A DNA stretch of 64,000 nucleotides from Hypanus sabinus (lineage: Eukaryota). Position numbers and translations under genes: made by a program. Shown one piece after another: positions 10,543 to 64,000 of this stretch. Location of the stretch: positions 48,546,001-48,610,000 of the forward strand of contig NC_082714.1 in assembly GCF_030144855.1 (NCBI RefSeq). Direction: 5' to 3'. The notes beneath the pieces are model-generated. The model ran no database searches. It was not told where the DNA came from and saw nothing but the letters and a program-made list of their open reading frames with translations. How positions within the stretch are numbered: the stretch's first letter is position 1; every line of letters begins with the position of its first letter.

Positions 10543-13500
10543 TCAATCATTAGATTAAGCTATTTGTTGTTTTAATACTTTGTCTTCTATTGCACATTGG
10601 TTGTTCGTCAGTCTCTGTTTGTAGTTTTTCATTGATATATTGTATTTCTTTGCTTTGCTGAGAATGCCTGCAAGAAATCAAATCTGAATGTAGTTCACAG
10701 TGACATTTACATATCTTAATAATACACTCACTTTGAACTTTCCTTTCTCTGGAGCATTGGAAGCTGAGGGGGCAACCTGATACAAGGGTATAACATTATG
10801 AAAGGCAATCGGTCTACCTAAAACTCTACCATAAGATAGATAGTCAGAGTCCTTTTCCCAAAGTGGAGATGACAAATTCTGGAGGTTGTAGCTTTAATGC
10901 GAGAGGGGAAATGTTTTTGTTTTACACAGTGTGGTAGCTGCTTGGAACCTGCTGTCAGGGTTGGTGGTACTTTATAACAGTAAGGTAGATGCTGTCCTTG
11001 AGTCTGGTGGTGTGAACTTCCAGGCTTTTGTATCTTCCCCAATGGAAAGGGGGAGATGAGAGAAGGTCTGGAATGGGGGGTGCGTTGATCTTTGATGGCT
11101 TATTTACTGTGGCATTGGTAAGTGTAGATAGAGTCTATGTCCTGTCCTCTTCACATGCCTTGCATGAATTGACAGGCAGATGAATTCCATCCCCAATTAC
11201 TACACTGACAAAGATGTTCCAAGTTGACTTTCTTTAATGTAGCTACTGGTAGTAGGGTAAAACTGACAGAAAGAAAAACATACAGTCAAAAAGCGTCCAA
11301 ATTCCCATTGTGGTAAGTATTAAGTATACCAAAAATGATACAAAATAACACAAGATACTGTATACAAATAAGTTCCAAATGTATCATAAAGACAGGCTAC
11401 TGGTAAGCAAGATGTTGCTACATACAATGTATCTTATGCACATTCTCTTACTACAAGCGAGCCAGAACATATGGCCCACAGGAATACTCCATCTGTATTT
11501 TTATCTCACACAAGTCATTCAAGTATCTCTGATTTGTGGAAATATGTATATACATCAGTAAATGATAAACCCAAAGGTTACTTTTACATACTGACGATGG
11601 TTTCAAATACCTGAACGTCAGGCTGATGTCAGATGAAAAGGCATGAGTTTTCACTAGCCCTGACATGGAGAACTGCTTAGATGCCTACTGATGATATCGT
11701 CAACTAGAGACACAGATCACATGTCCTAAATGACTGCTATACAAAACCACCAACAGAGGGTGTTAAATGACAAATAAAATTAACTGACTGCTAAGACAGC
11801 ACAGTCCATGAGGAGAAATTTTTTTTTATGACATGCTGAGCTCTGTCCACAACTCTCTGCAGTGTTTTCCAGTCATTTGCAGAGAACTTGTCATGCCAAC
11901 TGATGATGCACCCAGACAAGGATGCTTTCTATGATGCATTGAAAAAAAAATTGATAAAGGACAAGACAACTACTTAGTGGTGAGCTTTCCTAGCCATGGC
12001 AGCTACATGGTTGGTCCCGGACAAGTTATTGGTTCAACTAAAAGAAGATGTAGGAAGAGCAGGAAGATGTTTTGCAGCATTTACTTTATCAGTCTGATGC
12101 ATCACAGCTTGGCTTGCAAGTGGTCTGACCTAAATCACTTTAAGTTGCTGAGATTGCAGCCAAGTCTTTCAAGAAAACCAGCCTCCACTCTGTTCATGGT
12201 GCTTCCAATGTCTTAGGAAAGTAGTCAACATCATCAAAAACCCCACTCCACCTCAGTCATTCACGGCCCCTCATGGCCCATCAAACAGAAGATTTGCATC
12301 ATAAGAGTCAGGGACAAATTTTGTCCCACTGTTATAAGACTTTTGAACACATCTCTACTATGACAAAGATGAACTATTGATCCCACAGTCTACCTCTTTA
12401 TGTATCTTCCACTATATTTGCATATCTTTAACACTATATTCTGCATTCTTTTTTCAGTTTTTTTTCCATTTAGACATGGAACAGTACTGTTTGGAATGGT
12501 CTGTCTGCATGGCATGCAAAATAAACTTTTAATTAGTTATTTCAAATTTATAGAAGTTCAAAATTTTAATTACATTTATTATCAAACTACACATATATTA
12601 TACATACAGGCAGCCACAAAACAAAGAAACTCAAAAGAACCCATTTAAAAAAAAGTTATACACCCAATATTCAGAGGACAAAAAACAGACCATACAAACA
12701 ATAAGCACGAGCAAATAACATTCTGAACTGAATTCTGCAAAGGTAGTCCATTCAGCGCAGAGCTGAGTGAACATCATGGAGCAACAAGCTGAACCAATCC
12801 ATCCTTGCCTCGGATTCTGACACCCTGAACTTTCCAATTCAGCTCGGCGCTTAAATCATTGTCCAAACATCGGGTTCCGTTGCTTCGATACGCTCTGTGG
12901 CCTGGACCCCACCACCTTGATTCAATCCATCTCAGATGTTTCCAACTTGGTCTGATGCTTAAACTGATTGAACCACGGATCTTCCTCACTCTTGGCATGG
13001 GCCTACTGCTGCGCCTCTCCTTTGTTCTGCCACGTTGAGTTGCCTCCAAATCCAAAGGGAAGTTCCAGGCTATTGTTCACGATGATCACTTACCAGAAAA
13101 AAGAGTGACTAACAAATTATTTACTGTAGTTGTTTTCTTTGTTTCATTAACTACTAGCCAGAAGTCACTGAGGTTCACCAACTCCATCTTAAATTGTCTC
13201 AGTACATTTGACAATAATAAACCAATTACAGATATCCAATTAAATGCTGAAACAAAAAAAAAAAACATGTGGGTGGGTTAATTGGGCACTGTAAATTGTC
13301 CTCAGGTCAGCTGGGTTGTAGACTTGATGGAAATATGGCTAGAATAGGGTTAATCATAAAATTAAACTAGATGGGAATACATTGATGGGAAAATTAATCT
13401 AGATGGGAACTAGCATGCATTTGAAGGGAAAGCTGTTGATTTTCTATACACAGGAAATGTGGAATATATTTAGCATTCTCTAAAGGATTGTTGTTTCCAG

Positions 13501-14182
13501 ACAATAATGTAAAGATGGCTATAAATGAGGAGGTTACAATGAAGTTTCTTTAAAGAAACACAGCAAAACCTGAGGTGAAAAATAGTTATTGAGAAAAGCT
13601 TCAAATAAATGAATTCTAGTGGAAATCCAAAAGGGCAGGAGAAGACCCAAAGGTGATGGAAAGTGGTCATCAGACTATGAATGTTATTGTTAATTTATGA
13701 TCACTTACAGTTATTTAGAATTCAGTTTGTTAAAATATTTGAAAGAGCTTATCTTGATCATCAGAAATTCAGAGATTGGGAGTGTAGAATATCTAAAGAC
13801 CTCAGCTTTTTGGTGTGCCTGTATATCTGCAAGTTTGAGAAGTGTGGAGCAAAGGATAATTACACTTATTTTTCTAAAACCACGCTTTTTCAAGATAAAG
13901 AACTTGGCTTAAGATCACAAGTTATACCATTCTTTCCGTATAGGGCTACCTTCTCCGTATAGGGCTACTGTATTTGGTACAATGATTCAGCAAGTTGTAG
14001 CTGAAGATTTGTTGATGAGTCATTGAAACTTTATCGGCTTTGAAGTGATGAATATACACAATAGACCATTTCCAGAACACACAACTGCACGAGTATTTCA
14101 AGTCCATGATTGGGTACATCTCAGTTATCAACCATATTCACATTGGTCCAGCCTTGAGTCAGTTGAGCTCCATGTTGCAATA

Positions 14183-17100
14183 TTTTTTTAAAACTTTTTT
14201 ATTTTTATTGAACACAAACAAAAACAGAAACACTGAACATATGCTTACAAAGCCAGGAAATCACACATAAGCAGCAACAAATATATAACTATTAACTTTA
14301 AATATACAAATAAACAAGAAAATCCACTCTAAGTACTGTTGGACAGAAGGAACTATATCTAAAAGGAGTCACAAAACAGAAACGTTTACAGGAATAACCT
14401 GAAACATTGACAGATTTGTACAGTCTTTACAGCTTTCTGGTTATGGGAAGTTTTCAGGGTATTAATGTATAGTTTGAAGTCTGACTTAAAAAATATAAAT
14501 GAATGTTTCTTATTGCAGTGTTTGCATTTATGGATATAAAATTTGCTGTAAATTATCAAAAGATTTATGATAAAGAAATGATCCCTATGACATTTGGTAT
14601 TATTAGTAAACCCAAATAAGACATTTTCAAAAGAAAAAGTAAAATCCGCATTAATATATTGATCTATAAATTGCCAAACATCAACCCAAAATGTTTTAAC
14701 ATATTCACAATCCCAAAACAGATGAAATAAATCCTCTGGATATAAACCGCAAAAAGAACAGTTAGTTTCAATATCAGAATTAAACCTTGTCAAATAGACA
14801 TTGGTTGGATAATATCTATGTATAATTTTAAATGACATTTCTTTAATTTTATTCCTCAATATTTATTAAATAAGCCTCAAATACCCTTCCACCTCAGATT
14901 CCCCAAGCGACTATTCCAAAAACTAATAGCCGTAGGAATAGAAGTAATATCTTTTTGAAACAAACTTCTGATACCTTTATTATTTTCTTTAAAAGATGGA
15001 GCAGAACAAATTTTTCCTACAGCTGTACTGGATGGATCCAAGATGGGTAATTCAACTAGTAAATATGATGTATTTCTAAACAACATAATTACACCAGAGG
15101 GAATTGCATCCATGACAACAGCAAATTCTTTTGGAGTCACAAGAAATTGAAGGGTGGATAAAAATTCAGTATAACTCAATAAGTACCGCTTGAATTAAAT
15201 AACTGTTTAACTAACAAAATATTACTATCAAACCAATTTTTATATAAAATGAAGATTTATTCTTATAAGTTATGTTGTGGTTATTTCAGATAAAGTAACT
15301 ATGTGGAGAAAAATTGTGTTTGTAAATCAAAGACTAAGATAAAAGCATCTGTTTATGAAACTGAGATAAATGGAGAGGAACTTTGTCTATTTTGTAATTA
15401 CTTAAAAGAAAAAAATTTCAATCCACCAACCTGGGAAAAGACAAAAGAAGGAACACAATTCCATATAGAAATAGGATTACATAAAAATTGTTTAATCCAA
15501 TTAATTTAAAAGGTATTATTAACACTGTCAAAATCAAGAAAATTTAGACCCCCCCCCATCATAACTATTCATGACAGCAGATTTTTTTATATAATGAACT
15601 TTGTTTTTCCATAAAAAGTTAAACAACATGGTGTCTATCAATTTATGGATTTTTTAAAAATCGATGTACAAGAGGAGAGCTATATATACAATCCTGGAAA
15701 GACCTTCTGCTTTACAAAGCAAAACCCAGCCTTTCAAAGATAAGTCCCTTTGAAGCCGCTGGTTTAATCTTCCTTTGGCTTTGTCTATAAGAGGTTGAAA
15801 ATTATCCACACACCTTAAGTATTCGTTTTTAACAATAGTTATCCCCAAATATGTAACTTTGTCTTTTACTATTAATTATAGATTGAGTGCAACCTTTAAG
15901 AGGAAACAATTCACATTTATGAATATTTAGACAGAGGCCTGAGGCTTTGAAAAAAACAGAAATACAGTTTAAAGCCAATGAGATTTCCGAAACATCATTT
16001 AAGAAAAGAGTCGTATCATCTGCAACCTGACTAATCAGATAATTGGAATTTGCACAGGAAATGCCTTTTGGAGAACTAGACTTGATGGAATAGGTGAGCA
16101 GCTGAGCACATAAAGGGATAAATAAGGAGAGATAGGACAACCTTGTCTCACCCCCCCCATTCACATCAAACCTTGGTGCAGTCCCCAACTTCAACTTTGT
16201 GGAACTATTAGCGTTTGTGTACAAAGCCTTAACAGCCATACAAAATTTACCAAGAGCAGAGATGATAAACTGATGCTCAATAGTATCAAAAGCTTTGTAG
16301 AAATCTAAAAATAGTATAAGACTATCTTTTTGAACAAGATGAGGATAATCAATAAGATCTAAAACTAATCTGACATTATTAGAGATATGATGACTGTGTT
16401 GCCTTTATGGCAGTTATTTAGTTTATAATATTTTCACTTAGTAATTCATTTGTTAGCATTTTCTAGTTAAAGTTAGGATTGTTTAAAGTAAATTCGTTGT
16501 CTGTGATATATCGCGGCATGCGATGACGTCACATCCGATTTCGCCGCGTCCTGTGGGAAAATACCGGTTTGGAGAAATGGGAAGGTGGGGCTGATATGTG
16601 CGAGTCCAGAGCAAGAAAAGTTGTCTTTCTACGCACTAGAAACATAGTGGAAGCAACGCCGTAAGTCATGAGATAATAAATATGTTGAATTAAAATGTTA
16701 ACGCTGACTCTTTTAAAAGTAACAACGGTCGATAAGGTTTATGTTTTTGTTAGTTAAAGAGTTGCGGATAGTTTGTGTTGAAGTGTATTTAAAGCAGTCA
16801 ATGGCGTAGGTAGATTCTGACTGTATGCTGCACTTTAATGTGATGTAGTTGTAGTTTTACTTTTGCAAGTATTTACGATGTAAATGTAATATCAAGAAGG
16901 AAACAAATGCTGTACAAATCTTGTATTGTTTTATCAACAGTTTTCACCATACGTTAATGAGGAAGAGCGAACAGTAAATGGTTAATCTTACTGTGACCCT
17001 GTTTTCATTGACCACGGTTTATCTCGGTGTTTAGTTCGGCGTTCCATTACACCTGAGCGAGAACACTACAGTGAAAAGGCGGCATTATCAGGTGTTTCAA

Positions 17101-20100
17101 TTGCTACAATGACAACTCAATCCAACATCAAGTCGTTGCCATCCAGCGACAGGGGTAGTAGGGCATCATCAAGTAAGGCCGCCCACGCAAGAGCTAAAGC
17201 AGAATTCGCCAAGGTGCGAGTGCGCTACGCCAAACGAGAAGCAAAATTGAAAATGGAAGTGGCCGCCAGACAAGCCGAAAACCAGAAAGAAGCGGCTGCC
17301 AGAGAAGCCGAAAACCAGTTGGAAAGGGCAAGGATAGCGGCAGAGTTAGAAGTGCTGATGCTGGAACGAGAACAAGAAGCTGCCAGGGTGGAAGCAGAGT
17401 TAATAGAAGATGCTGAAGAAATGCACGATCTGGTTGACGTAAAATCTACTTCAGAAAAGACCAGACTGGAATGCACAAGTGACTATGTCCAATCTCAAAT
17501 AGATCTGAAGATTCGTTCTTCCTCTCCATACTTATTCGATAACGCCCCACTTCATGAGGAGTCTCAGAGAGGCCCAATTGCATCACATCCATCCGAGGAA
17601 GACAATTTACCCTTGCAACTCCGTGATGAATTCAAGAATGAAAGGGCTGATGACAAAGACTTCTCGACACCAAACTTACCAGATTTGGCGAGAAGAGAGG
17701 CAAAGGCTGAATTCAGAACTGCAAAGTCCATAACAGAGGTACGCCCTTGGTCATATACCCGCCGACATATTTCCCCAGCCCGCATGCCACTTGCAGTTGA
17801 ACCCATGGCACAGTATTTAGCATGATGAGATCTCGTCACTTCAGGACTGTACCAGTTCGACGATAAACCTGAAAATTACCGTGCATGGTACTCCACATTC
17901 ACCAACGCTATCAATGGAATCCAGCTCAAAGCAACCCAAGAGTTGGATCTTATGGTGAAATGGCTGGGAAAAGAATCATGTGAACAGCTGAGATGCATAC
18001 GTTCAGTGTACATCAACAAACCCGAGTTAGCCTTAAGCAAAGCATGGGAGAGACTTCGGGAGAGCTATGCGCCCCCCGAAATTATTGAAGTGGCGCTATA
18101 CTGACGTCTGAAAAATTTTCCTAACGTGTTAGCCAAGGACCACATTATGTTAAGGGAGCTCGGAGATTTACTCATGGAGATTCAAGGCGCCAAAGAAGAT
18201 GGCTACTCAACTGGTCTAGTATACCTAGATACTCCATCCGGGATTAGACAAATCGTGGACAAACTTCCATTTGGGCTGCAGGACAGGTGGGTGTCTGTTG
18301 CCTCAGAGTACAAAGAAAACCACAATGGTTGATTTCCTTGCTTTGAGTATTTCACTAGGTTTGTGTGCAAGGAAGCGAAGAAGTGAAACGACCCTAGCCT
18401 CATGAGTCCAGGAAGCAGTACAATTTACACCAAGCCAGATAAATCCTCTTCAAATAATTTCAACATTAATAAACCCGTCTCAGTGCTTAAGACTGAAGTC
18501 TTTACACCTAACCACGACCCTAGCAAGAATTGTCCATTGCAGAACAAACCCCACCCCCTCAGAAAATGTAGAATGTTTAGGGAAAAACCCCTTGAAGAGA
18601 GGATGGCCCTTCTCAAGGAGAAAAGAATATGTTTTAAATGCTGTTCCTCGACCTCTCACCTTGCTAGAGAGTGTACGATCGCCGCGAAGTGTCCGGAATG
18701 TGATAGCACTAATCACGATGGGGCCATGTATCCCGGCCCATTACCACAAACCGACAAAGCTCCTTCACCCCCACAACAGGATGGCGGGGAGGGAGAGGGT
18801 CATTCCAGGACAACTGTTGTCCGCTCAAGCTGTACAGAAGTTTGCGGTCAAGCTCAGTCAAGCCATTCTTGTTCAAAGATCTGCCTCACTAAAGTGTACC
18901 CTAAGGGAGCCAAAGATAAGGCCATCAAAGCCTATGTGATTCTGGATGATCAGAGCAATCGCTCACTAGTCAGTCCAGAGTTCTTTAACTTGTTCAACAC
19001 CGAGAGTGAGCAGCTCCCATACTACCTTAGAACTTGCTCAGGCAACGTGGAAACTCATGGAAGGAAGGCAGAAGGCTTCCAGCTCGAGTCCCTGGATGGT
19101 AAAGTCGTCATCTGTCTCCCCCAACTCTTAGAGTGCAATGAGATTTTGAATAACCGCAAGTGCAAGTGCAGAGCTACACCAGCCACATCTCCACCACATC
19201 GCCAAACACATCCCAGAACTGGATCCAACAGCAGAAATACTCCTGCTATTAGGAAGAGATGTTCTTCAGGTGCACAAGGTTAGGCAGCAGGTCAATGGAC
19301 CACACGACGCCCCCTTTGTGCAACGCCTGGATCTGGGCTGGGTGGTGATAGGAGAGGTGTGCCTTGGCAACGCACACAAACCGACGGTTAGCACACTGAA
19401 GACCAATGTGCTAGAGAGTGGCCGCCATTCAATTTTTCAACCCTGTCAAGAACACTACAATGACCCTTCATGAAACCTGACTGTTTCATCAATAATAAAT
19501 GGTAAAACTACTTCCATTCTGTTAGCAAACATTTGGACCAGAATTTTATAATCACTATTGAGAAGGCAAATAGGACACCAATTATTAATAAATAATTCAT
19601 CTTTTTTTGGTTTAGGAATTAAAGTAATAAGGCCCTGTTTTAAAGTGGGAAGAAATTCTTTATCAATACATTCTAAAAACAACTTTAGTAAAAAGGGAGC
19701 TAGGATGTCAGAAAACATCTTATAAAATTCTGCAGTCAGACTGTCCACACCCGGCAAGTTATTATTTTTAAAATTTGAAATGGCAGCCTTAACCTCTCCC
19801 AAGGTAATAGGAGCAACACACAGGTCTTTCTGATCATTGGACAGGCTCCTAAGAATATTATTAACATTCATGAAATGTAGTGCAGATGCTTCACAATATA
19901 TTGAGCTATACAGTTTACTATAAAAAGCAGAACAATATTTTGTTATTTTTTTGGAGTCCTCTGTAATCACACCATCAATATTAAGCTGATGAATGGAACT
20001 GAATTGGGCATGTTGCTTTTCTAAACAAAAGAAATAAGCTGCACTCTGTTCACCCTCTTCCAACCACTGTTTTCTAGATCTCACATATGCAGCTTCTGCC

Positions 20101-20778
20101 TTTATAAGATAAAGATGGTTTAACTTATCCTTTAACGAAGCCAGCTCCTCTTTATCTTTCCCTGAAAGGTTATCTGGAAACAATTCACATAAACTTGCAA
20201 TTTTTGAGATCGGTGATTGTTCTTCCAATTTTCTTTTCTTTACTAAATCACTACTGTATTTCTTAAAGAATTTGGCAGATACAAATTTTAGAAGTTCCCA
20301 ATTTGTAGAGAAATTATTGTCTATCATCACTTTACATAAAAAAGTAGGTTGCCAGCTTTTTAATGCGCAAAGAGACAACTTCATGCCCCAAAATGGAATT
20401 ATTTAATTTCCAATAAGATTTAAAATTGAATTCAGCTGAAGATAATGCAACTTGTATATGGATAGCTTTATGATCTGTTAAAGGTGAGGGAAAAAAATTA
20501 AAAGTGACATTATTATTTCTTAAGGTATCGGATAGTAACCAGTATTCTAGCCTAGACATGCATGTAATAGATTCATTAGTCCAGGTATAATTTCTAACTC
20601 CAGGAAAGTGCTCTCTCCAAATATCTATGATATTAAACTTCAGAATAAAGCTAGTAAAATTATTATAAGTAGAGTGTTGCCTTGGTGGCCATCGATCAAT
20701 ATTTTCATCTAATACCATATTAAAGTCTCCTCCCATAACAATAACTAGATCAGGAAATTTAGAGAGCCAATAATCAAA
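14183..20778 (-). mobile_element. 5'-truncated L1/Tx1-type LINE, split by a BEL/Pao insertion
   Basis: ORF2 pieces: GGDFN...TDH (APE), PGVDSLTAEFYK and PICLLNSDYKIL (RT start), QVADDTTLFL, and CSFC..HLFWDC; T-rich tail at 14183-14210. Absent at the paralogous site near 53315. Confidence 0.92.
16395..19459 (+). mobile_element. Internally deleted BEL/Pao LTR retrotransposon
   Basis: 5' LTR TG...CA at 16395-17070. Gag from 17109 has stops and three Cys/His knuckles (CPL..KPH...C, CFKCC....H...C, CPEC...H), followed by the protease motif YVILDDQSNRSL. Ends with the last 11 bp of the LTR (AGAACACTACA). 5-bp TSD ATGAC at 16390-16394 and 19460-19464. Confidence 0.9.
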
Positions 20779-23680: not shown

Positions 23681-23999
23681 AAGAAAGAAAGAAAGAAAGT
23701 GACCAAAATCTCACCTTAGCATTTGTCTCTTCTTACCGAAGCCTCTAGAGCCAAAGCCCCAAGCTCCCTATACTATCACTGGCCCACTCACAGAACAGTT
23801 TCTCCAACAATGACTGCTCCACTAAACCTCACACCTTGTTATAGTGCTCTGTCAAGAAACTAATACACAGCCTCATCATAAGTGTGCCAAAATGTTTCAA
23901 AGGTCCCACTCTCATTTTAATTCTCACACTCAGTTCACTCACTTCAAAACAAGAGTCTGCTTGTGATATGTACCATGAACTAGTATAAATATGATGATT

Positions 24000-30922: not shown

Positions 30923-30928
30923 TTTATT
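30923..30928 (-). terminator. Poly(A) signal of beta copy 1
   Basis: First AATAAA on the minus strand after the stop codon, about 195 nt downstream. Confidence 0.6.
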
Positions 30929-50845: not shown

Positions 50846-53800
50846 TATTTTTAATGAAACACAGCAAAAGCTTGGGTGAAAAGTAGCCATTAAAATTTCA
50901 ATTAAATTAATTCTAGTGGAATTCCAAAATTGCAGGAAAAGATGCAAAGGTGAGGGAAAGTGGACATCAAACTGTGGATGTAATGGCTATTTAACAATTA
51001 TGTCTTACGTCTGGATACCTGTCAGGAAGATCGTGATTATTATTAGACTTACTATGGATCAAGACTGAAGGTGAATTTTGAAAGGATCACCTGCTATTGA
51101 GTATTACATGGGATGACACAGAGGGACAGAGATATTCCGGAATATATCACGAATAGATTTACAAGATTGTATCATCAAATTAGTTCTTTTTTTCTAATTT
51201 CAAACATAAAAAGGTATTAAACCAGGGCATCAAAGTAAAGAAGGCAAGTGTGTCCTCTAGAGTAATGCTTTAAACATTTGGAAGTTCTCAATGTATAATC
51301 CACCATTTATAACTTTTCATCCTCTTACTGTTCTCCTTACCTGAGCATAAAATTGCATTGCAAAGACTAATAGGTAAACAACTGTGCAATGATCATTATC
51401 AGGGAAATTTAGTACAGAGTAATGCAAATTTGGAAGATGCAATTTAGAACATAGAACAGTACAGCACTGGAACAGGCCTCTGGTTTATAATGTGCTGAGT
51501 TAATTAAAATAATGATGCTTATAATGATAACAAATCCCTTCTGCTTTCACATTGTCCATATTTCTCCTACTTAGCAGTTTATTCCAAAATAACTCTATCA
51601 AAGGAAAGTAAAATATTGTGGATGTTGAAAGGCTGTAATAGAAAAAAGAGTTTTTGAGGTACTCAATAGGCCAGGCAGCCCAGGCAGGGAGAAACATATC
51701 AGTATCCTCTCATTAAAACTGGAAAAGTGTGAAAACAAGCTTCAGGTTTCAGTCTGAGGAGAGAACAGAGGGAGCATCTGAGCTAGAGTAACAAACATTT
51801 CTCTCCAGTATTCACAAATACTTAGATTCTTGGAGGAATATAGACAGAAAGATGAATGAAGATAATAGACAAATAAAATGGTGGAACTCTGAGATGTAAG
51901 AACTGCAGTTGTTGGAAAATTGAAGTTAAAGAGGATTTTGGAAATACTGGGAAGATCAGGGAGATCCAAAGAGAGAGAAAATCTGAGTGAATGCTATCAA
52001 ACTGACCAATTCTAGCATAAACAATGAAGACCAATTATCAGAATCTGTTGTATCTTGGAGGCTACAATTTGTCCGCGGGGAAGATGAGGGATTGTTCCTT
52101 GAGTTTATTTTGGGTTTGCTGAAACAGTATTCGTGGCCCCAGAATGAGAAATTATTCATTCAGTAGAAGTGAGGTGAAGAATTAAAATGAAAGGTAATTC
52201 AAAGGTTAGGTTCACCCATTCGATTGAATAGTGATAGTCTGCAAAGTCATCATCAATCTGCAGTTGGTTTCTCCAGTGTAGAAGAGACCACGTTGTAAAC
52301 ACTGGATTGGAAGATTGGAAAGAGAAATTGAAGTTCAAACTCACACAGGGTAATGAAGCCTTGAAAATTACTTTTATGTAGCAGAAGAGCAGTACATAGG
52401 AGGACAAAGACAAACTGCTGTCAGTATAAACTTGTGTTAACATAAATTATATGTTTGCACATGTGAAAATTATCCAACAAAGTAAACAATCCTAGTGCAA
52501 GATGGAGAGAGAAAAACAGTATTTCTTTCCTAATCTCAAATATATAATTATAACAGTCCTTCTGACTTTCCTTTCAAATATATATTGTACCATTGTATCA
52601 TTTGCTGTAACTTACTTTATTCTGCTGCAGAAATACACAGTTACGCACACCCACTTCTTTGTGCAATTTATTTAATATTGAAGCAATGTCTATTATCTCA
52701 CTTAGTGAAGGGTGTAATTATATAATATGTAACTTCAAATATTTTGTGAAATTACTTAAAGTTAATTAATGTATTGAGAAAACTGGTTTTATGATGAAAA
52801 CCTAATGTGATGTGAAAGCTGATTTAAATGCCTGATGTTATGAAAGCTTACAGTTATTTAGGATTCAGCTTGTTAAAACATTTGAGAAACTTGTTTGGGA
52901 TCATCAGAAGTACGGAGGTAGGGAGTGTAGACTATCTCGGTATCTCAGCTTTTTAGTGTGCATGTACATCTGCAGGTTTGAAAAGTGTGGGACAAAGGAT
53001 AAATACACTCAGTTTTCTAAGAACAACCTTCTTCAAGATAAAGAACTTGGCTTAAGATCGCAGGCAACAACATTCTCTCCATATAGGGCTACCTTCCAAT
53101 ATTTGGTACAATGATACAGCGAATTGCCACTGAACATTTGTTGATGAGTCATTGGAGCATTATCAGCTTTGAAGTGATGAAAAAGCACAATAGACCATTT
53201 CCAGAACACCCAAGTGCATGAGTCTTGCAGATGCATGATTGGGTACATCTCAGTTATCAACCACGTTCACATTAGTCCAGCCTTGAGCCAGTTGTGCACC
53301 ATCTGTCTATATTTGCAAACCAATTTTATCAGCACACCTTCATGATAGAGCTGAGGAAATTTTATTGTGCATGTTTGTTACCAATATATATTTAGTTTAA
53401 AGTGAGGCCCTCTATGGAAAATGAAGCAAATATAATTGAATTGAATTGATTATTTCTTTAAGTTATAGGTGATGGAGTAATCTTCAGTCTCTACATGGAC
53501 TGGTGAGAGATCCAAAGCAGAGAAGAACAATGGTGTAATTATGGTTGGGGTTGGGCAGGAAGATGTTAATGATGGGAAAGAGTTAAGTAATGAGCATGAC
53601 TGAGCAGAAATGGTTTGGATATTCACATGTTTATTAAGCATGGATGGTGGAGGTCTAGAAGACATAGATCTGATCTACGGACAAAAACGACACAGAAGAT
53701 GGACTCAGCAGCTGCCTGACTGGGGCTAAGATGGGGTTGGCTGGAAATGAAGACCTAATGGTCACAGGATGGATGAGGAAGCGATCTGACACCAAGGATG

Positions 53801-56212
53801 TTGAATTTTAGACAGTTGCCAGCAGAAAGGGTAGAGTGAGATTCTGGAGAATACTGTGACAAAGGCCAAAGAAATATCTCCAATCTTCTCAACATGTCAG
53901 GATGTGTTTTTTAATTTCAGTAACTGTCCAAAAATATGGATTTCACCCAGACTCACACAGTGGGCAAGAAAAAAATTCCATCATTTCCAATTGGGTCAAC
54001 TAACAAATTGTTCTTCTGATAATTATGTTGCCTTCAAATTTTGTGACAAATCAGGGGAGAAAGGATTGATCTGCCTTGAATATATAATCCAATTGAATAA
54101 TCTCATGCCCCAATATAGCTAATTTTATGTACTCCTGATATTAATATCAATAAAAAATCAAAACAAATGTCGAAGAGAGAATGACAAAGTCATCTGTCAG
54201 AAATATGAAAAACAATAAAAATCACAATGTACCAAACCTACCAATAAATGTTTGAAGTAAATTTCTACTGATTTCATAGTAGAAATTAGACAAGACATCT
54301 CACAACTGAGAGTCAATGGAGGATTCCTGAGAAATAGCGGTGAAGTGTGGGGTCAGTGTTGCTGGGGAAGCTAACAGTGTGTTCTAGTAAAGACTAAATG
54401 TTGTCTTATCCAGTGAGTGTGTTTGGCAGGAGTTCTGTCCACTAGCTGATAGGAGGCAGTAGAATATATAAAGGCTTCAGACAAAGTTAAAGTTTCTTAG
54501 TATATGATCTTTAACCTAATTCTCTGTCCCCTGTTGTATAGGTAGTATAGGTAGTATTTATCTGACAAAGATATTTCCATGAGTTGCCATTCCTTCTAAC
54601 CTTCCCTGTTCTGATGAGGTGGAGCGTTCTGTCCTTGGCAAGGCCTTAACTTTGTCCCCCTCCACCCGCACTTCAGTCAGTTCCATAATGGCCTCAATGC
54701 TGAGCTCTTCTTCTATTGCCCTTGTCTCCAAGCGCACTTCTTTGAGAAGAATTCCACAGGCTACTGCAAAAGATCGAAATAAGCTCCAGAGAGTTGTAAT
54801 CATAGTCATCTCAACATTCCTAAAAGTTTGAAATGATTGCTGCTAGTGATTAGAGGCTGTGACCACTATCCTTATGAGGTGAATTATCATGAATTTAACC
54901 TGAAGCTCTGGTGCCCAACCAGTGGTACTGCACCTTGTGAATATACAGTACTTCAATGCAACACACAACACAGACATTGACTAGGCACTTCCATCACCAT
55001 CATGGAGAGGGTCACAAATCTATGACACAAGGGATTACTGCTAGAATCTGCAGCAAAGAATCAAGTTGGAGGTAGAACTGCATCAAACAGCATTTGAAGA
55101 GGGAAATGGACAGTCAACGTTTCTATCAAGACCTTTATAAAAAAAGGTTTTTGGCCAAGTGTCTTGGATTTGGAAATGTTTGGTTCATGAGAGGCAGGGT
55201 GTCTGCTCCATCGATGGGTTAAGATAAAGTCAGATGTATGAGTATTACTGTGGAGTAAAGGGAACTACAGAGGCACATGAGGGGAGCTAGCCAAAGTAGA
55301 CTGAAAGGGGATAATAGCAGCATAGCAATGACCGTGGGAAATTCAGAAGGCACAGGACAGACACACCTCAAAGATGAAGAGTGTTCTAAAGGGAGGATGA
55401 AGCAACTGTGGCCAACAAAGGAAGTCAAAGTTAGAATAAAAGGAATAGAGAGAGCATATTATCAAGAAAAAAGTAATGGGAAATTAGAGAATTGGAAAGC
55501 TTTTAAAAACCAACAGAAGGCAACTAAAAAGCCATTGAGAAAAGATAAAAATCTGAAGGTAAGTTGGCCAATAATATAAAAGAGGATACCAAAAGTTTTT
55601 TCAGATATATAAAAAGTAAAAGAGAAGCAAGAATAGATATTGGACTGTTGAAAATGATGATGGAGAGGTAGTTCTTGGGGCTAATAAATGACAGGAGAAC
55701 TTAATAAGAGTTTCATGTCACTCTTAACCATGGAAAACATTAGGCAGAAATTTGAAATCAATGGAAAAAAGTTTAGCTGTATTTGTCAATGTACATCAAA
55801 ACATACAGTGAAATATGTCATTCACAACAAATCAAATCAGTGAAGATTATCCTGGTCAGCTGAGAAACGTTGCCACACTTCTGGCAGCAATATCACATGC
55901 CCATAATTGAGTAACTCCTAAAACTTGGGTTTTGAATGTTAGAGGTAGTCAGAAGACCTGGAGAAAATGCACACAGTGATGGGGAGAAAAAACAATCTTC
56001 TTGCAGGCAGTGCTGGGCAATCAGACCCTCATCTTACAGTTGCGGTTGTGAAGCAATTGCATTAATGTCTAAACTACCATGCCAACATATTTTATAGCAT
56101 ATTAAAAGCAGTCTTAAAACCAAAGCACTTCTTTGCACATATGAAGCACTGGCTTAATCACATATAACTCTGAAATGAGGAGCTTGTGATCTGTGACAAT
56201 GTGAGGTGATAT

Positions 56213-57070
56213 ATAGGCCAGTTAGAAGGGTAGGCTGAACGATGGCAGATGGAGTTTAATGCTTATAAGTGTGAGGTGCTACATTTTGTTAGGACTAATC
56301 AAAATAGGACATACATGGTAAATGGTAGGGCATTGAGGAATGCAGTAGAACAGAGTGATCTAGGAATAATGGTGCATATTTCCCTGAAGGTGGAATCTCA
56401 TGTGGATAGGGTGGTGAAGAAAGCTTTTGGTATGCTGGCCTTTATAAATCAGAGCATTGAGTATAGGAGTTGGGATGTAATGTTAAAATTGTACAAGGCA
56501 TTGGTAAGGCCAAATTTGGAGTATTGTGTACAGTTCTGGTCACCAAATTATAGGAAAGATGTCAACAAAATAGAGAGTGTACAGGAGGATTTACTAGAAT
56601 GTTACCTGGGTTTCAGCACCTAAGTTACAGAGAAAAGATGAACAAGTTAGGTCTTTATTCTTTGGAGCGTAGAAGGTTGAGGGGGGACTTGATAGAGGTA
56701 CCTAAAATTATGAGTGGGATAGATAGAGTTGACATTGATAGGCTTTTTCCATTGAGAGTAGGGGAGAGTCAAACAAGAGGACATGAGTTGAGAGTTAAGG
56801 GGCAAAAGTTTAGGGTTAACATGAGGGGGAATTTCTTTACTCAGAGAGTGGTAGCTGTGTGGAACAAGCTTCCAGTAGAAGTGGTAGACAAAAGTTCGAT
56901 ATTGTCATTTAAAGTAAAATTGGATAGGTATATGGACAGGAAAGGACTGGAGGGTTATGGGCTGAGTTCAGGCCACTGGGACTAGGTGAGTGTAAGCGTC
57001 GGCATGGACTAGAAGGGCCGAGATGGCCTGTTTCCATGCTGTAATTGTTATATGGTTATATAGTTATATG
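56213..57070 (+). mobile_element. 5'-truncated CR1 LINE
   Basis: MEFN..KCEVLH, LVRPNLEYCVQFWSP and FFTQRVV.VWN.LP; TTATA(T/G)G-type tail; candidate TSD TGATAT (56207-56212, 57069-57074); absent at the paralogous site near 29765. Confidence 0.93.
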
Positions 57071-59107
57071 ATATCTATTAATATACGAACGTTTGTAGAT
57101 ATCAGTGGTTTCTGCAGCAGAGAGCACCTTCCCTCTGCTACAGCTTGTGAGGAAACACTGTACAACGGTGATCACAAGATAGGATTTATCTTCCTATAGA
57201 TTAGGGGACCAGCTTATGAAGAGTGATCCCGGAGAAAGAACCACAATTGCAACTCCTCCATTCTCAGAACTTAGAGCTGAATATAAGGGATGGATGTGTG
57301 ATGTAGAGTCTAGAGTTGAACTCCCACACTTTGGAAATAAATGTACCAACTTTGCTCCATCTCTATATCACACCTGTTACACATATCTAATATAATTGAA
57401 CTTCACAATAACCCGTATCTCCTTAATAATGATTGGGTGTATTTATAGGTCCAGTGTTGGAGTAGAAACTGAATATGTTTAAGGTTGATGTTTAGGAAGA
57501 AGCACAAGATCCAAATCCAATGGTGCATGTTGGAATTATTGTTACGTGTAGTCAGATACAGGAAGACATGCTCAGAGCTGTAGATTGCCATGGTTGTGGT
57601 CAATATAAACATGGGATGACTGGAGCATTCTGTAAATGTGTGTTTGATGGTTGGTGTGAGCTAAGTACCAATTTTCATGACATTAATAAACTTAACTAGA
57701 GAAAACAGGTAATAAATATTGCAACAGCAGATCAGAGAGTGTGAAGTTAGGGTAGCTGGATGCAAATCTAATAAACAATTGTTTTACTTACTCAAAATTC
57801 CAATGAAATTGTTCTGAGGGTGTGGGGGATGGTTTAGGGGTGCTCACAACTCACTCTGGTAATAGATGTAAGGATCTGTAAGAATTTTCTCAATTGTTCA
57901 AGCTGGTCTCCAGTCACTGTGCATTCCAGCGGTCTTTAACTCTCAGACCATTTCACATTTCAACTCAAGGTATATTCACCCACCTGCTCCTTCACATGTC
58001 CAGCTGCACAGGTCTGGGAGAATGGAGCCCTCTGACAGAGACTTCCCACAAGAAGAATCTGTGTTGCCATTCTCTGCTTGTGCCTTTTTGCTGAATCATC
58101 AGTCTAAAAGGTCTTTCCAAGACTCTTAAATCCTCCCCTTCATTGCTTTTGAGAGAGTTTGAAGAAGTGACTCTTTGCAGATAGTGAGAAGCACTGAGCC
58201 AATGGGGTAATCAACTCTGACTAAGGTGACTTTGTCTCATCGGAGATATTACCTCTGAGTCACATGTCATCTTCTCTTCTGAGGATAATATCCTGTTCGT
58301 CTCCAAGCCTTCTTTGCCCACTGGGAAGAGGTGAGACTTCTCCAGGTGTCCTCCACCAATCCTCACTCTTCTCCACTCAATGGATATTGTTTCACTCAGG
58401 CAGAGCCATCAGCAGTGGAATTGCCAGGCATTCATGCAACATGCAGGTCATTCTGTTTACAATTGTGTGATGAAGAATGGGTGAAACTATGACAGAACGT
58501 CGAATGCAGTGAGAAGTGGGCTGTGGCCAGTGATGTCTTGGAAATGAGAAAGAGGGTGTGGGGGGAACTGATTATGAAAGGATGAATGTGTAATCAGATC
58601 ATGAACGCTGTTCACACTGATGTGAAGTCCTTAGGTCACACTTGGAATATTATAAGCAGTTCTGGTCACTGCACTGGAAGCTATAGAAGCTTTGAAGAGG
58701 ATGCAGAAGAGGTTCACAATACTGTTGGCAGGAAGTAGATAAAGAGAGAAGTTGGAAGAACTTGTTGGAGCCAGAGTGTGACCTGAGAAGTAGATAAAAC
58801 TGAGATTTGCAGACAGAGTGCAAAACCCAGGATGGCAATGTCAAATACTAGGGAGCTTAGCTTTCACAGAGGAAGTGAGAGCTTAGAGCAGATTTACAAG
58901 GTAGGGTGTTTTTATAGTGAATGGTAGATGTCTAGTGTGCGCTAACAGGGGTAGTAGTGGAAGAAGATGTAGTAACAAAGTCGAAGAGGCACTTAGACAG
59001 GTATTTGAACAGAGTGGGAATGAGGAGAAAATGTACATAGTGAGATGGGTTTAGTATAAATCAGCATCATGGTGAGCATCAACATTGTGGGACAAAAGTC
59101 CGGCTCT

Positions 59108-60065
59108 TGTGCTGTAGAAGGTACATAATAGAGAGTGATGGGTGCCTAGTGTAGGGGGTGCTGTAGAGGGTACAAGAGAGGGAGTGATGGGTGCCTAATG
59201 TAGAGGGTGCATAAGAGAGAGTGATGGGTGCCTAGTGTAGGGGGTGCTGTAGAGGGTATCAGAGAGGGAGTGATGGGTGCCTAATGTAGAGGGTGCATAA
59301 GAGAGAGTGATGGGTGCCTAGTGTAGAGGGTGCTGTAGAGGGTACAAGAGAGGGAGTGATGGGTGCCTAGTGTAGAGGGTGCTGTAGAGGGTACAAGAGA
59401 GAGAGAGAGTGATGGGTGCCTAGCGTAGAGGGTGCCTGTAGAGGGTACAAGAGAGAGAGTGATGGGTGCCTAGTGTAGAGGGTGCCTGTAGAGGGTACAA
59501 GAGAGAGAGTGATGGGTGCCTAGTGTAGAGGGTGCCTGTAGAGGGTATCAGAGAGGGAGTGATGGGTGCCTAATGTAGAGGGTGCATAAGAGAGAGTGAT
59601 GGGTGCCTAGTGTAGAGGGTGCTGTAGAGGGTACAAGAGAGGGAGTGATGGGTGCCTAGTGTAGAGGGTGCTGTAGAGGGTACAAGAGAGAGAGAGAGTG
59701 ATGGGTGCCTAGCATAGAGGGTGCCTGTAGAGGGTACAACAGAGAGAGTGATGGGTACCTAGTGTAGAGGGTGCCTGTAGAGGGTATCAGAGAGGGAGTG
59801 ATGGGTGCCTAATGTAGAGGGTGCCTGTAGGGGGTACAAGAGAGGGAGTGATGGGTGCCTAGTGTAGAGGGTGCCTGTAGAGGGTATCAAAGAGGGAGTG
59901 ATGGGTGCCTAGTGTAGTGCGTGCTGTGGAGGGTACAAGAGAGGGAGTGATGGGTGCCTAATGTAGAGGGTGCCTGTAGAGGGTATCAAAGAGGGAGTGA
60001 TGGGTGCCTAGTGTAGTGCGTGCTGTGGAGGGTACAACAGAGAGAGTGATGGGTGCCTAGTGTGT
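59108..60065 (+). repeat. G-rich minisatellite with a variable unit of about 36-52 bp
   Basis: Repeats of GTGATGGGTGCCTAGTGTAGAGGGTGC(C)TGTAGAGGGTACAAGAGAG(A/G)GA with variant shorter units. Confidence 0.95.
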
Positions 60066-60911
60066 GTTGTCAGAGGGAGCAGTAGAAGCAGATATGACAG
60101 CAAAGTCAAAAGGGCATTTAGACACGTATTCGAACGGGCAGAGAATGGAAAGACATAAAGCATGTGCAGGTAGATGGGATAAGTTAAAATCAGCATCATG
60201 GTGAGCATCGACATTGTGGGCCAATTATTTAAGAGAAGCGTAGGTGTTACCCCCGTCATCAAATTTCTTTTAAAGATGGCTCACTGATAAATGTCATTGC
60301 TTCTTCTGGGCAATCACTTACAATCAATCCAAACTATATGGTACAAAAATGGACGAATATTAGATGGTGGCGGGAGAATCAGAGAACTGTTAATGGACGT
60401 GTGGGAGGATGGGTACAGAAAATGTAATGGTTTGGTAATTGTTCTGAATGGCCTGGTACCTTTTTATGAAATACAAGAAATATGTGAGAAATTAGTTCCT
60501 TCTTTTCCCCAAAGTACCGCAGTTGTTATTTCTAAACTACTCAGCAGATGAAAAATTCTTTGACCTGTTCTGTCCTGAGACACTGAAAGTTCCTACCGCA
60601 CAATGTCTGTTTTTAACACCAAACCGTTGTTTAAGTCATAGATCTTTTAATTTTCATTCTCTGGAAATGAACAATTTAGCCCTTATTATGAGTGAAATGT
60701 TGTTTCTCTATTGAAGTAAGAGGAATGCTTACAGACATTTTCCAAGTGTTGAACAAAATTACCATACAAAGAGGAATATTGTGCCACTTTATGTTAGCAT
60801 GACTTGAAACTGATGTTACACAAGTCCTTTAAGCAAACAACACATTGTAGTTACTGATAATACATGTTTTCATTGCATTTCTGAAGGTGGTGGAGGTTGC
60901 AGGTTATAGAT

Positions 60912-62266
60912 TTAATGGTAGTTGTTGGAGAGAGCTTCTGTCACCAGTTTAAAAAACTTGTAGGCAGCTTCATGTTCCTCTGGTCCGAATGCCGTTTTAT
61001 CACGAAGAGCGAGTTCAACAATGAAGGCCTGGCTGAGAAGCTGTGAAGAAAAACAATAATTATACAACATTGAAACAAAACTGGAAAGCAAAACTCAAAC
61101 CTCCAATGACTTCATACAGAACAGCCCAGTAGGAGGCCATTGTGTCCTCTGGGTCAGGGTCAATTCCCAGTGGTGCAAATACATTAAGCCCCACCTTTTT
61201 CCCTGTACACCGACGACATATTCCAGTCTCATGTCCCCATCAAAGCCCTTCTGACTCTTTTTGCCAAACAGTAGCTAATTAACCTGGAGCACAGCAAACT
61301 TGAGCGAACTCTCTGCAGACAGCAGCCAATATGAAGATTGTATCTGTCTCTGGAGCAGGGAAGTAGAAAAAAATCTGCATCTGTCGGATGATGAATAAAA
61401 GGAACTTGAAATCAACTTGTGGTCCTGTGCAATTCTGTCTAACCTAGTGCATGGGTCGTTGAGTGAGCATCCAGTGTAAATAGCTCTCATTAAAGTGATT
61501 AAATTTTCTAACCTGTTCCCAGATCTAATTCATGAGGAAAACTAGGGGGCAAATTTTTCCACGGAAACCAGGTCTCCTCCTTTTTCTTGCAGTTAAGTCC
61601 ATGATGTTGGTTGCCGTGCTTTTTATGGCTCTGTAATTAGGAAATACTTATAGCACCCCTTTAGTGAAAGTGAGCACATCATAAAAAGATTAGTTTGTAC
61701 CTTGAAGTTTTGAGTGTCCACTCCGATTTTTTGATGTTTACTGCTAAGTTCATAGAAATTGGTTTCAATACTGTTCAAATCTTTAATTGCAGTGTTTAGA
61801 GCCTTTAGCACTTTGCCTGCATGACTCTGAACACCAGGGTCACAGGCTGCAAAATGGCCATTGAAATTTTTAAACAGCCTGGTTGTCCAAGGATAGACTG
61901 CAAATACCCTAGAAAGAAAAAAGACAAAGTGTCCAGTTTATTTTGTGATATTCTTGAGCTTAAGTATTTCTCAAAGCTCATCATTGAGGAAATTTTTCTC
62001 AAATAGACTTACAGTGGGTTTGACTAGAACCTCAGCACAGTGTTGAATACTAGTTCCCTCACCCTGTAGCAACATCTAGGCAAGCATAGAAAATTAAATA
62101 ACTTGCACTGGAACCATAGTCAAAAATACAGGGCGTGACTTAAATGTAAAACAAAAAATACATTTTCATCATACCTTGCCAAGGCTTGGGCAGTTATCAT
62201 TTGCTTATCCAATTGGTCCCATTTGTTCCTGATGTATTGTTCCTGAGCCTCTGTTAATTTCACCAT
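60912..62266 (-). CDS. hbb: Haemoglobin beta-like chain, copy 2 (exons 62266-62175, 61908-61701, 61040-60912; 142 aa)
   Basis: Spliced translation [142 protein letters not shown]. Same exon sizes and splice sites as copy 1; 11 amino-acid differences by manual count, all in exons 1-2. Confidence 0.97.
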
Positions 62267-62336
62267 TTTGGTTGCTAAGCTCTCACAGTCACTGCTTGCA
62301 CAAGAAAGCTGTGTTGATCTGGAGCTTTGACTTAAC

Positions 62337-62461
62337 TTTTATAGGCTGCAAAATGACTCATCTCAGACTTACACTCAACTGTAATAGGCAGAGTACTTGG
62401 TGGGCTGGACACACTTTCCAAAGTTGGGCAGCAATCCTTCTGTGTTTGAATGTTAAGATAA
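62337..62461 (-). promoter_or_regulatory. Proximal promoter of beta copy 2
   Basis: CTATAAAA (62337-62344, minus), AP-1/NF-E2-type core TGACTCA (62354-62360) and AGATAA (62456-62461). Confidence 0.65.
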
Positions 62462-62624
62462 ACACTTGCTGAGAAATTCCTTGTCTGAACTTCGCTCTGC
62501 CTGTCCAATGCACAGAATCATTCTCCAATTTCATTGAATATTAAATTTAATACATTCATAATCAAATTTTGGAGCTCTCTCCTTGTTAATTGAACACAAC
62601 TCTGACACTTCACTTTGCCGATTA

Positions 62625-63145
62625 TTGCTGGAGTATGATATTCAATTCTGGTCGCTCATCATTGGAAGGATGTGGAGGCCATGGGGAGGGTTCAGAAGAA
62701 CTTTACCGGTGTGCTGGCTGGATTGGAGAGAACGTGCTATAAGGACAGTGGGCAGATGAGAGTTGTTTTCACTGGAGTGGGAGAGGGATGACATGACAGA
62801 AATTTATAAAATTATGAGATGCATCGATAGAGTTGACAGCCAGTGTCTTTTTTCCTAGGGTTGAAATGTCCACTACAGGAGGGCTGCATTAATGGTAAGA
62901 GGGGGACATTCAAAGGAAATATATGGGATAAGTTTTTTTTTAATAGGGAGGTTGGTGTTGGTGCTGTATTACCATGGTTGGTAGTGGAGGTAGATACAAT
63001 AGAGATGTTGAAGAGGCTTCCAAAAAGACACATAAAATGTACAGAGAATGAGGGACATGGATCACATGCAGACAGAATAGATGAGATATCGCTACTTAGT
63101 TTGGCTGAAGGGCTTTTTCTGGTCCTACATTGTTCTAGGTTCTAA
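62625..63145 (+). mobile_element. Old CR1 3' fragment upstream of beta copy 2 (paralogue at 33575-33910)
   Basis: Decayed LEY..QFWS, YKIMR..DRVD and FF..RV..motifs. Confidence 0.7.
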
Positions 63146-64000
63146 AGCCTTAGTGAAATAACAGCTATGTTATTCACACAATTTTGATCTTTGCTCTGTG
63201 TGTGTATGCAAAGTTTCAAAGGACTGGTCAGAATATCAGATGTGGATAAAATCATACAGCAATAATAAATCAATATGCTAATTTACCAATTTAGTTTAGA
63301 GAATGTTGGAAATTCTCAGGAAGTCAGGTCACGTCTGTGAGATTTCTTCTTTCTCACCCACAGGTCCAACCTGACCTGTTGAGAAATTCCAGCATTTTGT
63401 TTGTGACGTTTCCAGCATTTGCAAGTGTTTTTGATTGTCAGATATGAGGGTGCTTACCACTGATAGTACAATATTCAAATACATTTTCTACTCAGTAAGT
63501 GAAGTAGCCCATGTCTTGACACAAGCCTTACACTTCATTCTGCCATAAGCAGCCGGTAACATTCACATTACCGAAGTGCCAGGTACAACATCTCCAACAA
63601 GATGTCATGTAGGATTTTGTCCTTGTGTTCAAAATCATTAGTAATACAAAGACTCTGACCATTAACATCCCGGGAGTCGCAACTGACCAAATAGTGAACT
63701 GGATCAGGAAGAGAACTACTTTAGAATCATGAGCTGGTCAGACCCTCACTGTGCAATGGCAAGGCACTTACCTATGCCACAGCAGAAACTTCCCAACTTC
63801 CAATGGTACTATCCTTCAATCTAATGGATTACTCACCCAGTTGCCTGAATAAGGGCATCTCCGTCAGCACTCAAGAAACTCAGCGTCATCCACTTTGCGC
63901 AGCAGGTTGCTATCAGTTGTCCAACCTTGTCCTCTTCAACCACTGCAGCCAATTTTGCACAAAGAAGTCCACACACCTGCTCTGCTTCTTTTTTGTTCTT

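What the first reader, a model, noticed from the sequence alone, without database searches (positions are those of the whole stretch)
12250..64000. Beta-alpha-beta head-to-tail haemoglobin cluster built by tandem duplication of a roughly 36-kb cassette
Seen: all three globins are on one strand, and non-coding sequence from about 12.25 kb recurs colinearly from about 48.18 kb to the window edge, so the first unit (12.25-48.18 kb) holds one alpha and one beta. Known: teleost alpha/beta pairs are typically divergently transcribed and amniote alpha and beta clusters are unlinked. Inference: an alpha-beta cassette was duplicated as a unit, which predicts a second alpha gene or its relic beyond position 64000.
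Basis: partly seen in the sequence, partly recalled or inferred. Interest (0 to 1): 0.7.

Follow-up and report, generated by a model that had tools for sequence, protein, structure and literature searches.

The report
Stingray alpha-beta haemoglobin tandem gene array
The window holds three intact haemoglobin genes (beta, alpha, beta) of the Atlantic stingray, part of a head-to-tail repeated alpha-beta gene unit that is real and old but is already annotated and published.

Summary
Three intact three-exon globin genes lie on the minus strand: beta 32380-31123, alpha 42519-41677 and beta 62266-60912. Fourteen colinear direct blocks (8.2 kb, 77% identity) link 12294-34768 to 48234-63996, and the homology starts sharply at 12289/48229.

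The three proteins are exact matches to Hypanus sabinus RefSeq proteins XP_059834648, XP_059834649 and XP_059834650. A gene look-up places the next gene, an alpha-globin (XP_059834651), 7,773 bp upstream of the second beta on the same strand.

The two copies are far too diverged to be haplotypes. The second beta has a one-to-one orthologue in the red stingray with the same upstream alpha, so the duplication predates that split. Exon 3 of the two betas is almost identical (1 difference in 126 nt), which points to gene conversion.

Gene-ID order (B A B A B A B A B A A) suggests about five direct units. No DNA beyond the window could be read, so this is inferred.

The finding is not new. The genes are in RefSeq, and Walt et al. 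2026 (PMC13023373) describe this species' cluster and name the co-linear alpha-beta pair as the basic chondrichthyan unit. Only the direct orientation, against their "anti-parallel" wording, is a small nuance.

The parts
31123..32380 (-). beta-globin gene 1 (H. sabinus gene 132398824, XP_059834648). Exons 32380-32289, 32014-31807 and 31251-31123 including the stop. TATAAAA lies 77 bp before the ATG.
   Evidence: spliced ORF of 142 aa. Exact match to P0021. Gene span of 1258 bp agrees with the annotation.
41677..42519 (-). alpha-globin gene (gene 132398825, XP_059834649). Exons 42519-42425, 42180-41973 and 41802-41677 including the stop. CCAAT and GGGTG boxes lie upstream.
   Evidence: Exact match to P0014. 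Gene span of 843 bp agrees with the annotation.
60912..62266 (-). beta-globin gene 2 (gene 132398826, XP_059834650). Exons 62266-62175, 61908-61701 and 61040-60912 including the stop. TATAAAA lies 77 bp before the ATG.
   Evidence: Exact match to P0023. Both introns appear spliced out at these boundaries in contigs of a probable RNA run.
12294..34768 (.). Copy A of the duplicated segment, the part of unit 1 whose partner is visible in the window.
48234..63996 (.). Copy B of the duplicated segment, the start of unit 2. It runs off the window edge.
12294..48233 (-). Full first repeat unit of 35,940 bp. In the direction of transcription it reads 5.7 kb, alpha, 9.3 kb, beta, 18.8 kb.
   Evidence: The left edges of homology are at 12289/48229. 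A second alpha at the colinear place beyond the window is inferred.
31130..31380 (-). Probable gene-conversion tract shared with 60920-61170. It covers the end of intron 2, exon 3 and the first bases of the 3' flank at 96-100% identity, against about 80% in the introns.
   Evidence: 1 difference in 126 nt of exon 3; dS 0.29 in codons 1-100.
14185..20783 (.). Copy-A-only 6.6-kb insertion with a LINE remnant (zf-RVT ORF at 14386-14859, minus strand). It accounts for part of the changing offset between the copies.
59109..60063 (.). Copy-B-only minisatellite (about 50-bp unit, about 20 copies) just downstream of beta2.
37962..40725 (+). LINE fragment (reverse transcriptase ORF at 38495-39454) in the alpha-to-beta1 spacer.

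Best explanation
The window is the 3'-most end (in the direction of transcription) of a haemoglobin gene array on a 169.7-Mb chromosome of the Atlantic stingray, Hypanus sabinus. The repeat unit is a co-linear alpha-then-beta gene pair with its spacers, about 30-36 kb long, copied head to tail on one strand.

The window shows unit 1 in full (alpha 825 and beta 824) and the beta half of unit 2 (beta 826). The alpha of unit 2 (827) lies about 6 kb past the window edge.

The likely mechanism is unequal crossing-over or replication-based tandem duplication of the whole cassette. That step is inferred. Shown here are the later events: independent LINE and minisatellite insertions, purifying selection on both genes (dN/dS 0.18 between the betas), and a short gene conversion that homogenised exon 3 of the two betas.

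The split between the two visible units predates the Hypanus/Hemitrygon divergence. Near-identity of beta 824 and beta 832 shows later rounds of duplication or conversion within the array.

All three genes look functional: intact ORFs, canonical splice sites, TATA or CCAAT boxes, and distal and proximal histidines. They belong to a paralogue group different from the crystallised adult red-stingray haemoglobin.
For: - Gene models and splice sites.
- Alpha and beta assignment by best PDB hits 1cg5_A and 1cg5_B.
- Exact identity to XP_059834648, XP_059834649 and XP_059834650 of H. sabinus.
- Colinear direct homology, 14 blocks, 77% identity, Jukes-Cantor distance 0.27, running to the window edge.
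- Sharp left boundary of homology.
- Second alpha 7,773 bp upstream of beta2 on the same strand. The method was validated on the window's own alpha-beta1 spacing, predicted at locus position 20140 and observed at 20140.
- Red stingray orthologue of beta2 (93/93 support, same 1355-bp gene span) also has a 946-bp globin 5.97 kb upstream on the same strand.
- dN/dS 0.18, with dS 0.29 close to the non-coding distance.
- Conversion tract.
- Alternating gene-ID order B A B A B A B A B A A in Table S1 of PMC13023373.
- Spliced beta2-type contigs in a probable RNA run, and full coverage at 95-99% identity in an independent DNA run.
Against: - No DNA beyond position 64000 could be read, because the look-ups returned gene positions only. 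Continuity of non-coding homology between 34.8-48.2 kb and the stretch after 64 kb is therefore inferred from gene order, strand and spacing, not seen.
- The orientation of units 3-5 rests only on gene-ID order. Look-ups of beta 828, beta 830, beta 832 and alpha 833 showed no neighbour within 10 kb.
- Walt et al. 2026 describe cluster expansions, including this species, as duplications 'in an anti-parallel orientation'. That does not match the direct orientation seen here, at least for these two units.
- The RNA run is only guessed to be RNA, comes from a coded organism, and shows 2-5 mismatches per contig. It may be a relative or a paralogue.
Confidence: 0.85

Rival explanations
1. Only the beta-bearing segment (about 12.3-35 kb) was duplicated. 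The alpha genes next to each beta arose or moved there independently.
For: Inside the window only the beta-bearing part of the unit has a visible partner. The alpha part (34.8-48.2 kb) has no partner within the window.
Against: - An alpha sits upstream of beta2 on the same strand at a spacing of 7.8 kb, like that of unit 1 at 9.3 kb, which includes a LINE insert.
- Homology still runs at the window edge.
- The same alpha-beta pair exists in Hemitrygon.
- The alphas 825 and 827 fall in one supported clade.
Confidence: 0.06
2. The repeat is an assembly artefact: two haplotypes or a collapsed or expanded repeat wrongly joined in tandem.
For: None found.
Against: - The copies differ at 23% of aligned sites and by kilobase-scale insertions, far beyond allelic variation.
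- The two betas differ at 11 of 142 residues and each matches a separate RefSeq protein.
- beta2 has its own orthologue in another genus.
- An independent DNA run of a close relative covers the beta2 region contiguously in pieces.
Confidence: 0.01
3. The colinear similarity is due to shared transposable elements lying in the same order by chance, not to a segmental duplication.
For: The region is rich in LINE fragments and other repeats. One element occurs three times, at 26.55, 47.46 and 55.2 kb.
Against: Fourteen blocks lie in strict order and orientation. They include the whole beta gene with its introns and promoter. Most blocks have only one partner in the window.
Confidence: 0.01

Closest known systems
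Haemoglobin clusters of cartilaginous fishes as described by Walt et al. 2026 (Genome Biol Evol, PMC13023373), including the Atlantic stingray
   Same: It is the same species and the same genes (gene IDs 132398824 to 132398827 are in their Table S1). The co-linear alpha-beta pair is the basic unit, and batoids show lineage-specific expansions.
   Different: Their text describes expansions as duplications of the unit in anti-parallel orientation. The two units read here are in direct, head-to-tail orientation. Their figure could not be viewed, so it is unknown whether it already shows this.
[quoted passage not shown] 2007, cited in PMC3525417)
   Same: Alpha and beta are linked in a batoid, the ancestral gnathostome state.
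   Different: That case is a single pair. Here the pair is repeated in tandem.
Human alpha-globin (HBA2/HBA1) and gamma-globin (HBG2/HBG1) tandem duplication units (from general knowledge)
   Same: Direct tandem units made of homology blocks interrupted by unit-specific insertions. Short gene-conversion tracts keep parts of the paralogues near-identical.
   Different: The human units are 4-5 kb and carry one gene type. The stingray unit is about 30-36 kb and carries both subunit genes.
Teleost MN and LA globin clusters (Opazo et al. 2013, PMC3525417)
   Same: Alpha and beta genes are interleaved on one chromosome and expanded by tandem duplication.
   Different: Teleost pairs are commonly head to head. 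Here all four genes placed so far are on one strand.

Membership tests
Vertebrate alpha/beta haemoglobin genes (Pfam PF00042 globin) | Globin-fold sequence with best matches to haemoglobin alpha or beta chains | tested here: met
   best PDB hits are 1cg5_A (alpha) and 1cg5_B (beta), with E 2.6e-55 for the full beta. Database relatives carry PF00042.
Vertebrate alpha/beta haemoglobin genes (Pfam PF00042 globin) | Three exons with two introns at the conserved positions (after codon-position 2 of the Arg near residue 31, and after residue 100/101), with GT..AG ends | tested here: met
   For beta2 both junctions are also seen as spliced contigs.
Vertebrate alpha/beta haemoglobin genes (Pfam PF00042 globin) | Distal (E7) and proximal (F8) histidines present, with an intact reading frame | tested here: met
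   By eye on the alignments and the translations. The betas carry ..VQ(T/S)HAGKV.. and ..SSKHQK..; the alpha carries ..VRKHG.. and ..AKKHGE... No stops interrupt the frames.
Tandem (direct) segmental duplication of an alpha-beta cassette | Colinear same-strand homology of non-coding as well as coding sequence | tested here: met
   14 blocks, 8.2 kb, 77% identity.
Tandem (direct) segmental duplication of an alpha-beta cassette | The copies abut: the start of copy 2 follows the end of unit 1 without foreign genes between them | tested here: met
   One search shows the sharp edge at 12289/48229. No other genes were found between them apart from transposon ORFs.
Tandem (direct) segmental duplication of an alpha-beta cassette | Both genes of the cassette are present in both units, in the same order and strand | tested here: met
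   alpha 827 lies 7,773 bp upstream of beta2 on the same strand. Control. The DNA itself was not seen.
Tandem (direct) segmental duplication of an alpha-beta cassette | Non-coding homology continues through the alpha half of unit 2 | not testable with these tools
Assembly artefact (retained haplotig) | Near-identical copies at allelic divergence | tested here: not met
   77% identity with kilobase-scale indels.

The most novel reading that the evidence does not exclude
The direct alpha-beta array (genes 824-834) may be a stingray-lineage (Myliobatiformes) battery of developmentally regulated, perhaps embryonic, haemoglobins. On this reading it grew by head-to-tail cassette duplication. It is separate from the adult-type genes near GbY and contrary to the published 'anti-parallel' rule.

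That would parallel the mammalian beta-cluster and might be linked to live-bearing reproduction.

Support so far:
- The window's alpha is 70% identical to the crystallised adult red-stingray chain, and the beta is similarly divergent.
- The alphas form their own clade shared with Hemitrygon and Mobula.
- Walt et al. report more paralogues expressed in red-stingray embryos.
Probability: 0.3. Interest if true: 0.4.

Novelty: already known. Interest (0 to 1): 0.2.

Why it matters
The window is a clean, well-dated example of how haemoglobin gene families grow. A whole alpha-beta cassette was copied head to tail, the copies then drifted apart by transposon insertion, selection kept both genes working, and conversion patched one exon.

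For cartilaginous fishes it adds one detail to a 2026 survey: at least part of the Atlantic stingray expansion is in direct, not anti-parallel, orientation. It does not open a new question, because the genes, their order and the cluster are already in RefSeq and in print.

Tried and rejected
- I tried to read DNA beyond 64000 through exact-protein look-ups. Gene positions came back but no DNA, because the sample file was too large.
- I tried to map units 3-5. Beta 828, beta 830, beta 832 and alpha 833 have no globin neighbour within 10 kb, so their orientation stays inferred from gene-ID order.
- I looked for globin relics left of 12.3 kb or elsewhere in the window. There are none at E<1.
- I looked for a partner of 34.8-48.2 kb inside the window. 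There is none beyond scattered repeats.
- Pfam scans of 20 long ORFs found only LINE domains (RVT_1, endonuclease, zf-RVT) and no flanking host gene such as Luc7l, Aanat2 or Rhbdf1. No dedicated exon search for those genes was made.
- RNA runs: no run on record as RNA holds the stretch. Two of three guessed RNA runs gave nothing, and one gave two short spliced contigs. Expression level cannot be judged from contigs.
- The supplementary tables of Walt et al. hold no coordinates, strands or per-gene expression values.
- The scan's own notes on this genome added nothing on neighbouring globins.
- The N run at 10401-10542 was left alone.
Full report
**What is in the window.** A motif scan and six-frame reading found three globin genes, all on the minus strand. 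Exact peptide mapping with the flanking bases and reassembly of the coding sequences give three-exon genes with GT..AG introns.

| Gene | Exon 1 | Exon 2 | Exon 3 |
|---|---|---|---|
| beta1 | 32380-32289 | 32014-31807 | 31251-31123 |
| alpha | 42519-42425 | 42180-41973 | 41802-41677 |
| beta2 | 62266-62175 | 61908-61701 | 61040-60912 |

Each gene encodes 142 residues. Both betas have TATAAAA 77 bp before the ATG. The alpha has CCAAT and GGGTG boxes. tblastn with six stingray globins finds no further globin exon or relic in the 64 kb.

The exon-2 peptides hit chains B and A of PDB 1cg5 (red stingray haemoglobin) best. This fixes the order beta-alpha-beta and points to a batoid.

**The repeat.** Self-blastn and a chained comparison show 14 colinear, same-strand blocks joining 12294-34768 to 48234-63996. 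They hold 8,215 aligned columns at 77% mean identity (Jukes-Cantor distance 0.27). The last block ends at the window edge.

A more sensitive search shows the homology starts abruptly at 12289/48229. The sequence to the left of each point is unrelated apart from scattered repeats.

The offset falls from 35,940 bp at the left edge to 29,886 bp at the beta genes, because of copy-specific insertions:
- a 6.6-kb block with a LINE remnant in copy A (14185-20783; zf-RVT ORF);
- other copy-A-only blocks;
- a minisatellite of about 50-bp units in copy B (59109-60063).

**Whose genome, and what lies beyond the edge.** Searching with the open frames around exon 2, listing cluster members and reading them shows exact matches to Hypanus sabinus proteins:

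| Window gene | RefSeq protein | Gene ID |
|---|---|---|
| beta1 | XP_059834648 | 132398824 |
| alpha | XP_059834649 | 132398825 |
| beta2 | XP_059834650 | 132398826 |

The next gene ID, 132398827, is an alpha-globin (XP_059834651). Exact-protein look-ups returned no DNA but did return gene positions. Seen from the alpha and from beta2, a 945-bp, 142-residue globin gene lies 7,773 bp upstream of beta2 on the same strand. That is about 70040-70984 in window-equivalent coordinates, roughly 6 kb past the window edge.

As a control, the same look-up for the window's own alpha and beta1 reproduces their known spacing to the base. Beta1 was predicted and observed at locus position 20140.

The alpha-to-alpha period (about 28.5 kb) matches the beta-to-beta period (29.9 kb).

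**Age and history.**
- The two betas differ at 11 residues.
- In codons 1-100, dN is 0.053 and dS is 0.29 (ratio 0.18). The synonymous distance equals the non-coding one, and both genes are under purifying selection.
- Exon 3 has 1 difference in 126 nt. A 96-100% identity tract runs from the end of intron 2 into the 3' flank, while the introns are about 80% identical. This is a short gene-conversion tract, as another note of this scan had guessed.
- In a protein tree, beta2 pairs with a red stingray (Hemitrygon akajei) beta (support 93/93). Beta1 groups with H. sabinus beta 832 (99% identical) and beta 828.
- The Hemitrygon orthologue of beta2 has the same 1355-bp gene span, and a 946-bp globin lies 5.97 kb upstream on the same strand.

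So the split between the two units in this window predates the Hypanus/Hemitrygon divergence. Later duplication or conversion has acted elsewhere in the array.

The alphas 825, 827, 829 and 833 form a supported clade (96/96) with two Hemitrygon alphas and a Mobula group. This clade is distinct from the clade holding the crystallised adult chain 1CG8_A, to which the window's alpha is 70% identical. The beta is likewise diverged from 1cg5_B.

**Size of the array.** Table S1 of Walt et al. 2026 lists the H. sabinus genes in the ID order B824 A825 B826 A827 B828 A829 B830 A831 B832 A833 A834. A second group follows: B A A B B GbY.

The strict alternation fits about five direct alpha-beta units. 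I could not confirm the strands of units 3-5, because their genes have no neighbour within the 10 kb that a look-up shows.

**Reads.** One DNA run of a coded organism covers 60300-63000 throughout at 95-99% identity. A probable RNA run yields two contigs that skip exactly 61041-61700 and 61908/9-62174/5. These are the two beta2 introns with GT..AG ends on the minus strand. This supports the gene model and suggests that a beta2-type mRNA is made. Contigs cannot give expression levels, and neither the run's organism nor its RNA status is certain.

**Comparison with what is known.** Linkage of alpha and beta in cartilaginous fish has been known since Marino et al. 2007 (cited in PMC3525417). Walt et al. 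2026 (PMC13023373) surveyed 22 cartilaginous fish genomes, including this assembly. They report the following:
- The basic unit is a co-linear alpha-beta pair.
- The cluster is flanked by Aanat2/Rhbdf1 and Luc7l, with GbY at one end.
- Nprl3 is on another chromosome.
- Batoids show lineage-specific expansions, naming the Atlantic stingray among the complex clusters.
- Only a limited number of paralogues supply adult haemoglobin in this species.

They describe expansions as duplications "in an anti-parallel orientation". The two units read here are in direct orientation. Their figure could not be viewed, so I cannot say whether it already shows this.

**Verdict.** It is an old head-to-tail duplication of an alpha-beta cassette, probably one step in a five-unit array, with later transposon insertions and an exon-3 conversion.

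It is not an assembly artefact and not a beta-only duplication. It is ordinary gene-family biology and already public, so interest is low. The direct orientation and a possible developmental role for this array are the only open points.

Noticed in passing
window 31130-31380 and 60920-61170: Exon 3 of the two beta genes, with the end of intron 2 and the first bases of the 3' flank, is 96-100% identical while the rest of the genes is 80-92% identical. This is a short gene-conversion tract. It agrees with another first-stage note (s1-219692).
   Followed up: yes
window 3886-9895 (minus strand): A near-full LINE lies outside the duplicated unit. Its ORFs carry an endonuclease domain (6080-7477) and a reverse transcriptase (5230-6162), and a coiled-coil ORF1-like frame lies at 8465-9043. 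An assembly gap (N run 10401-10542) lies just beside it.
   Followed up: partly
window 2256-2633: A 54-bp unit is repeated 7 times at 99% identity, inside overlapping open frames on both strands. It looks like a young minisatellite, possibly derived from a transposon tail.
   Followed up: no
window 26553-26992, 47461-47943, 55225-55687: One element of about 450 bp occurs three times in direct orientation at 69-74% identity. Two copies are positional partners in the two units. The third sits just before the unit junction at 48.2 kb. It may be a dispersed repeat or a trace of the breakpoint history.
   Followed up: no
window 33124-33574 and 35889-36321: An inverted pair of 450-bp arms at 86% identity lies 2.3 kb apart. 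The first arm is absent from copy B, so it was inserted after the duplication. It is likely two copies of one transposon, or one element with long terminal inverted repeats.
   Followed up: no
H. sabinus genes 132398824 and 132398832 (P0021, P0022): Beta1 of this window and the beta of the presumed fifth unit differ by one residue, and their gene spans are 1258 and 1257 bp. This suggests a much younger duplication or a long conversion between distant units of the array.
   Followed up: partly
window 17109-20790: Three long ORFs (238, 293 and 309 aa) inside the copy-A-only insertion have no Pfam match. They are probably decayed transposon frames.
   Followed up: partly
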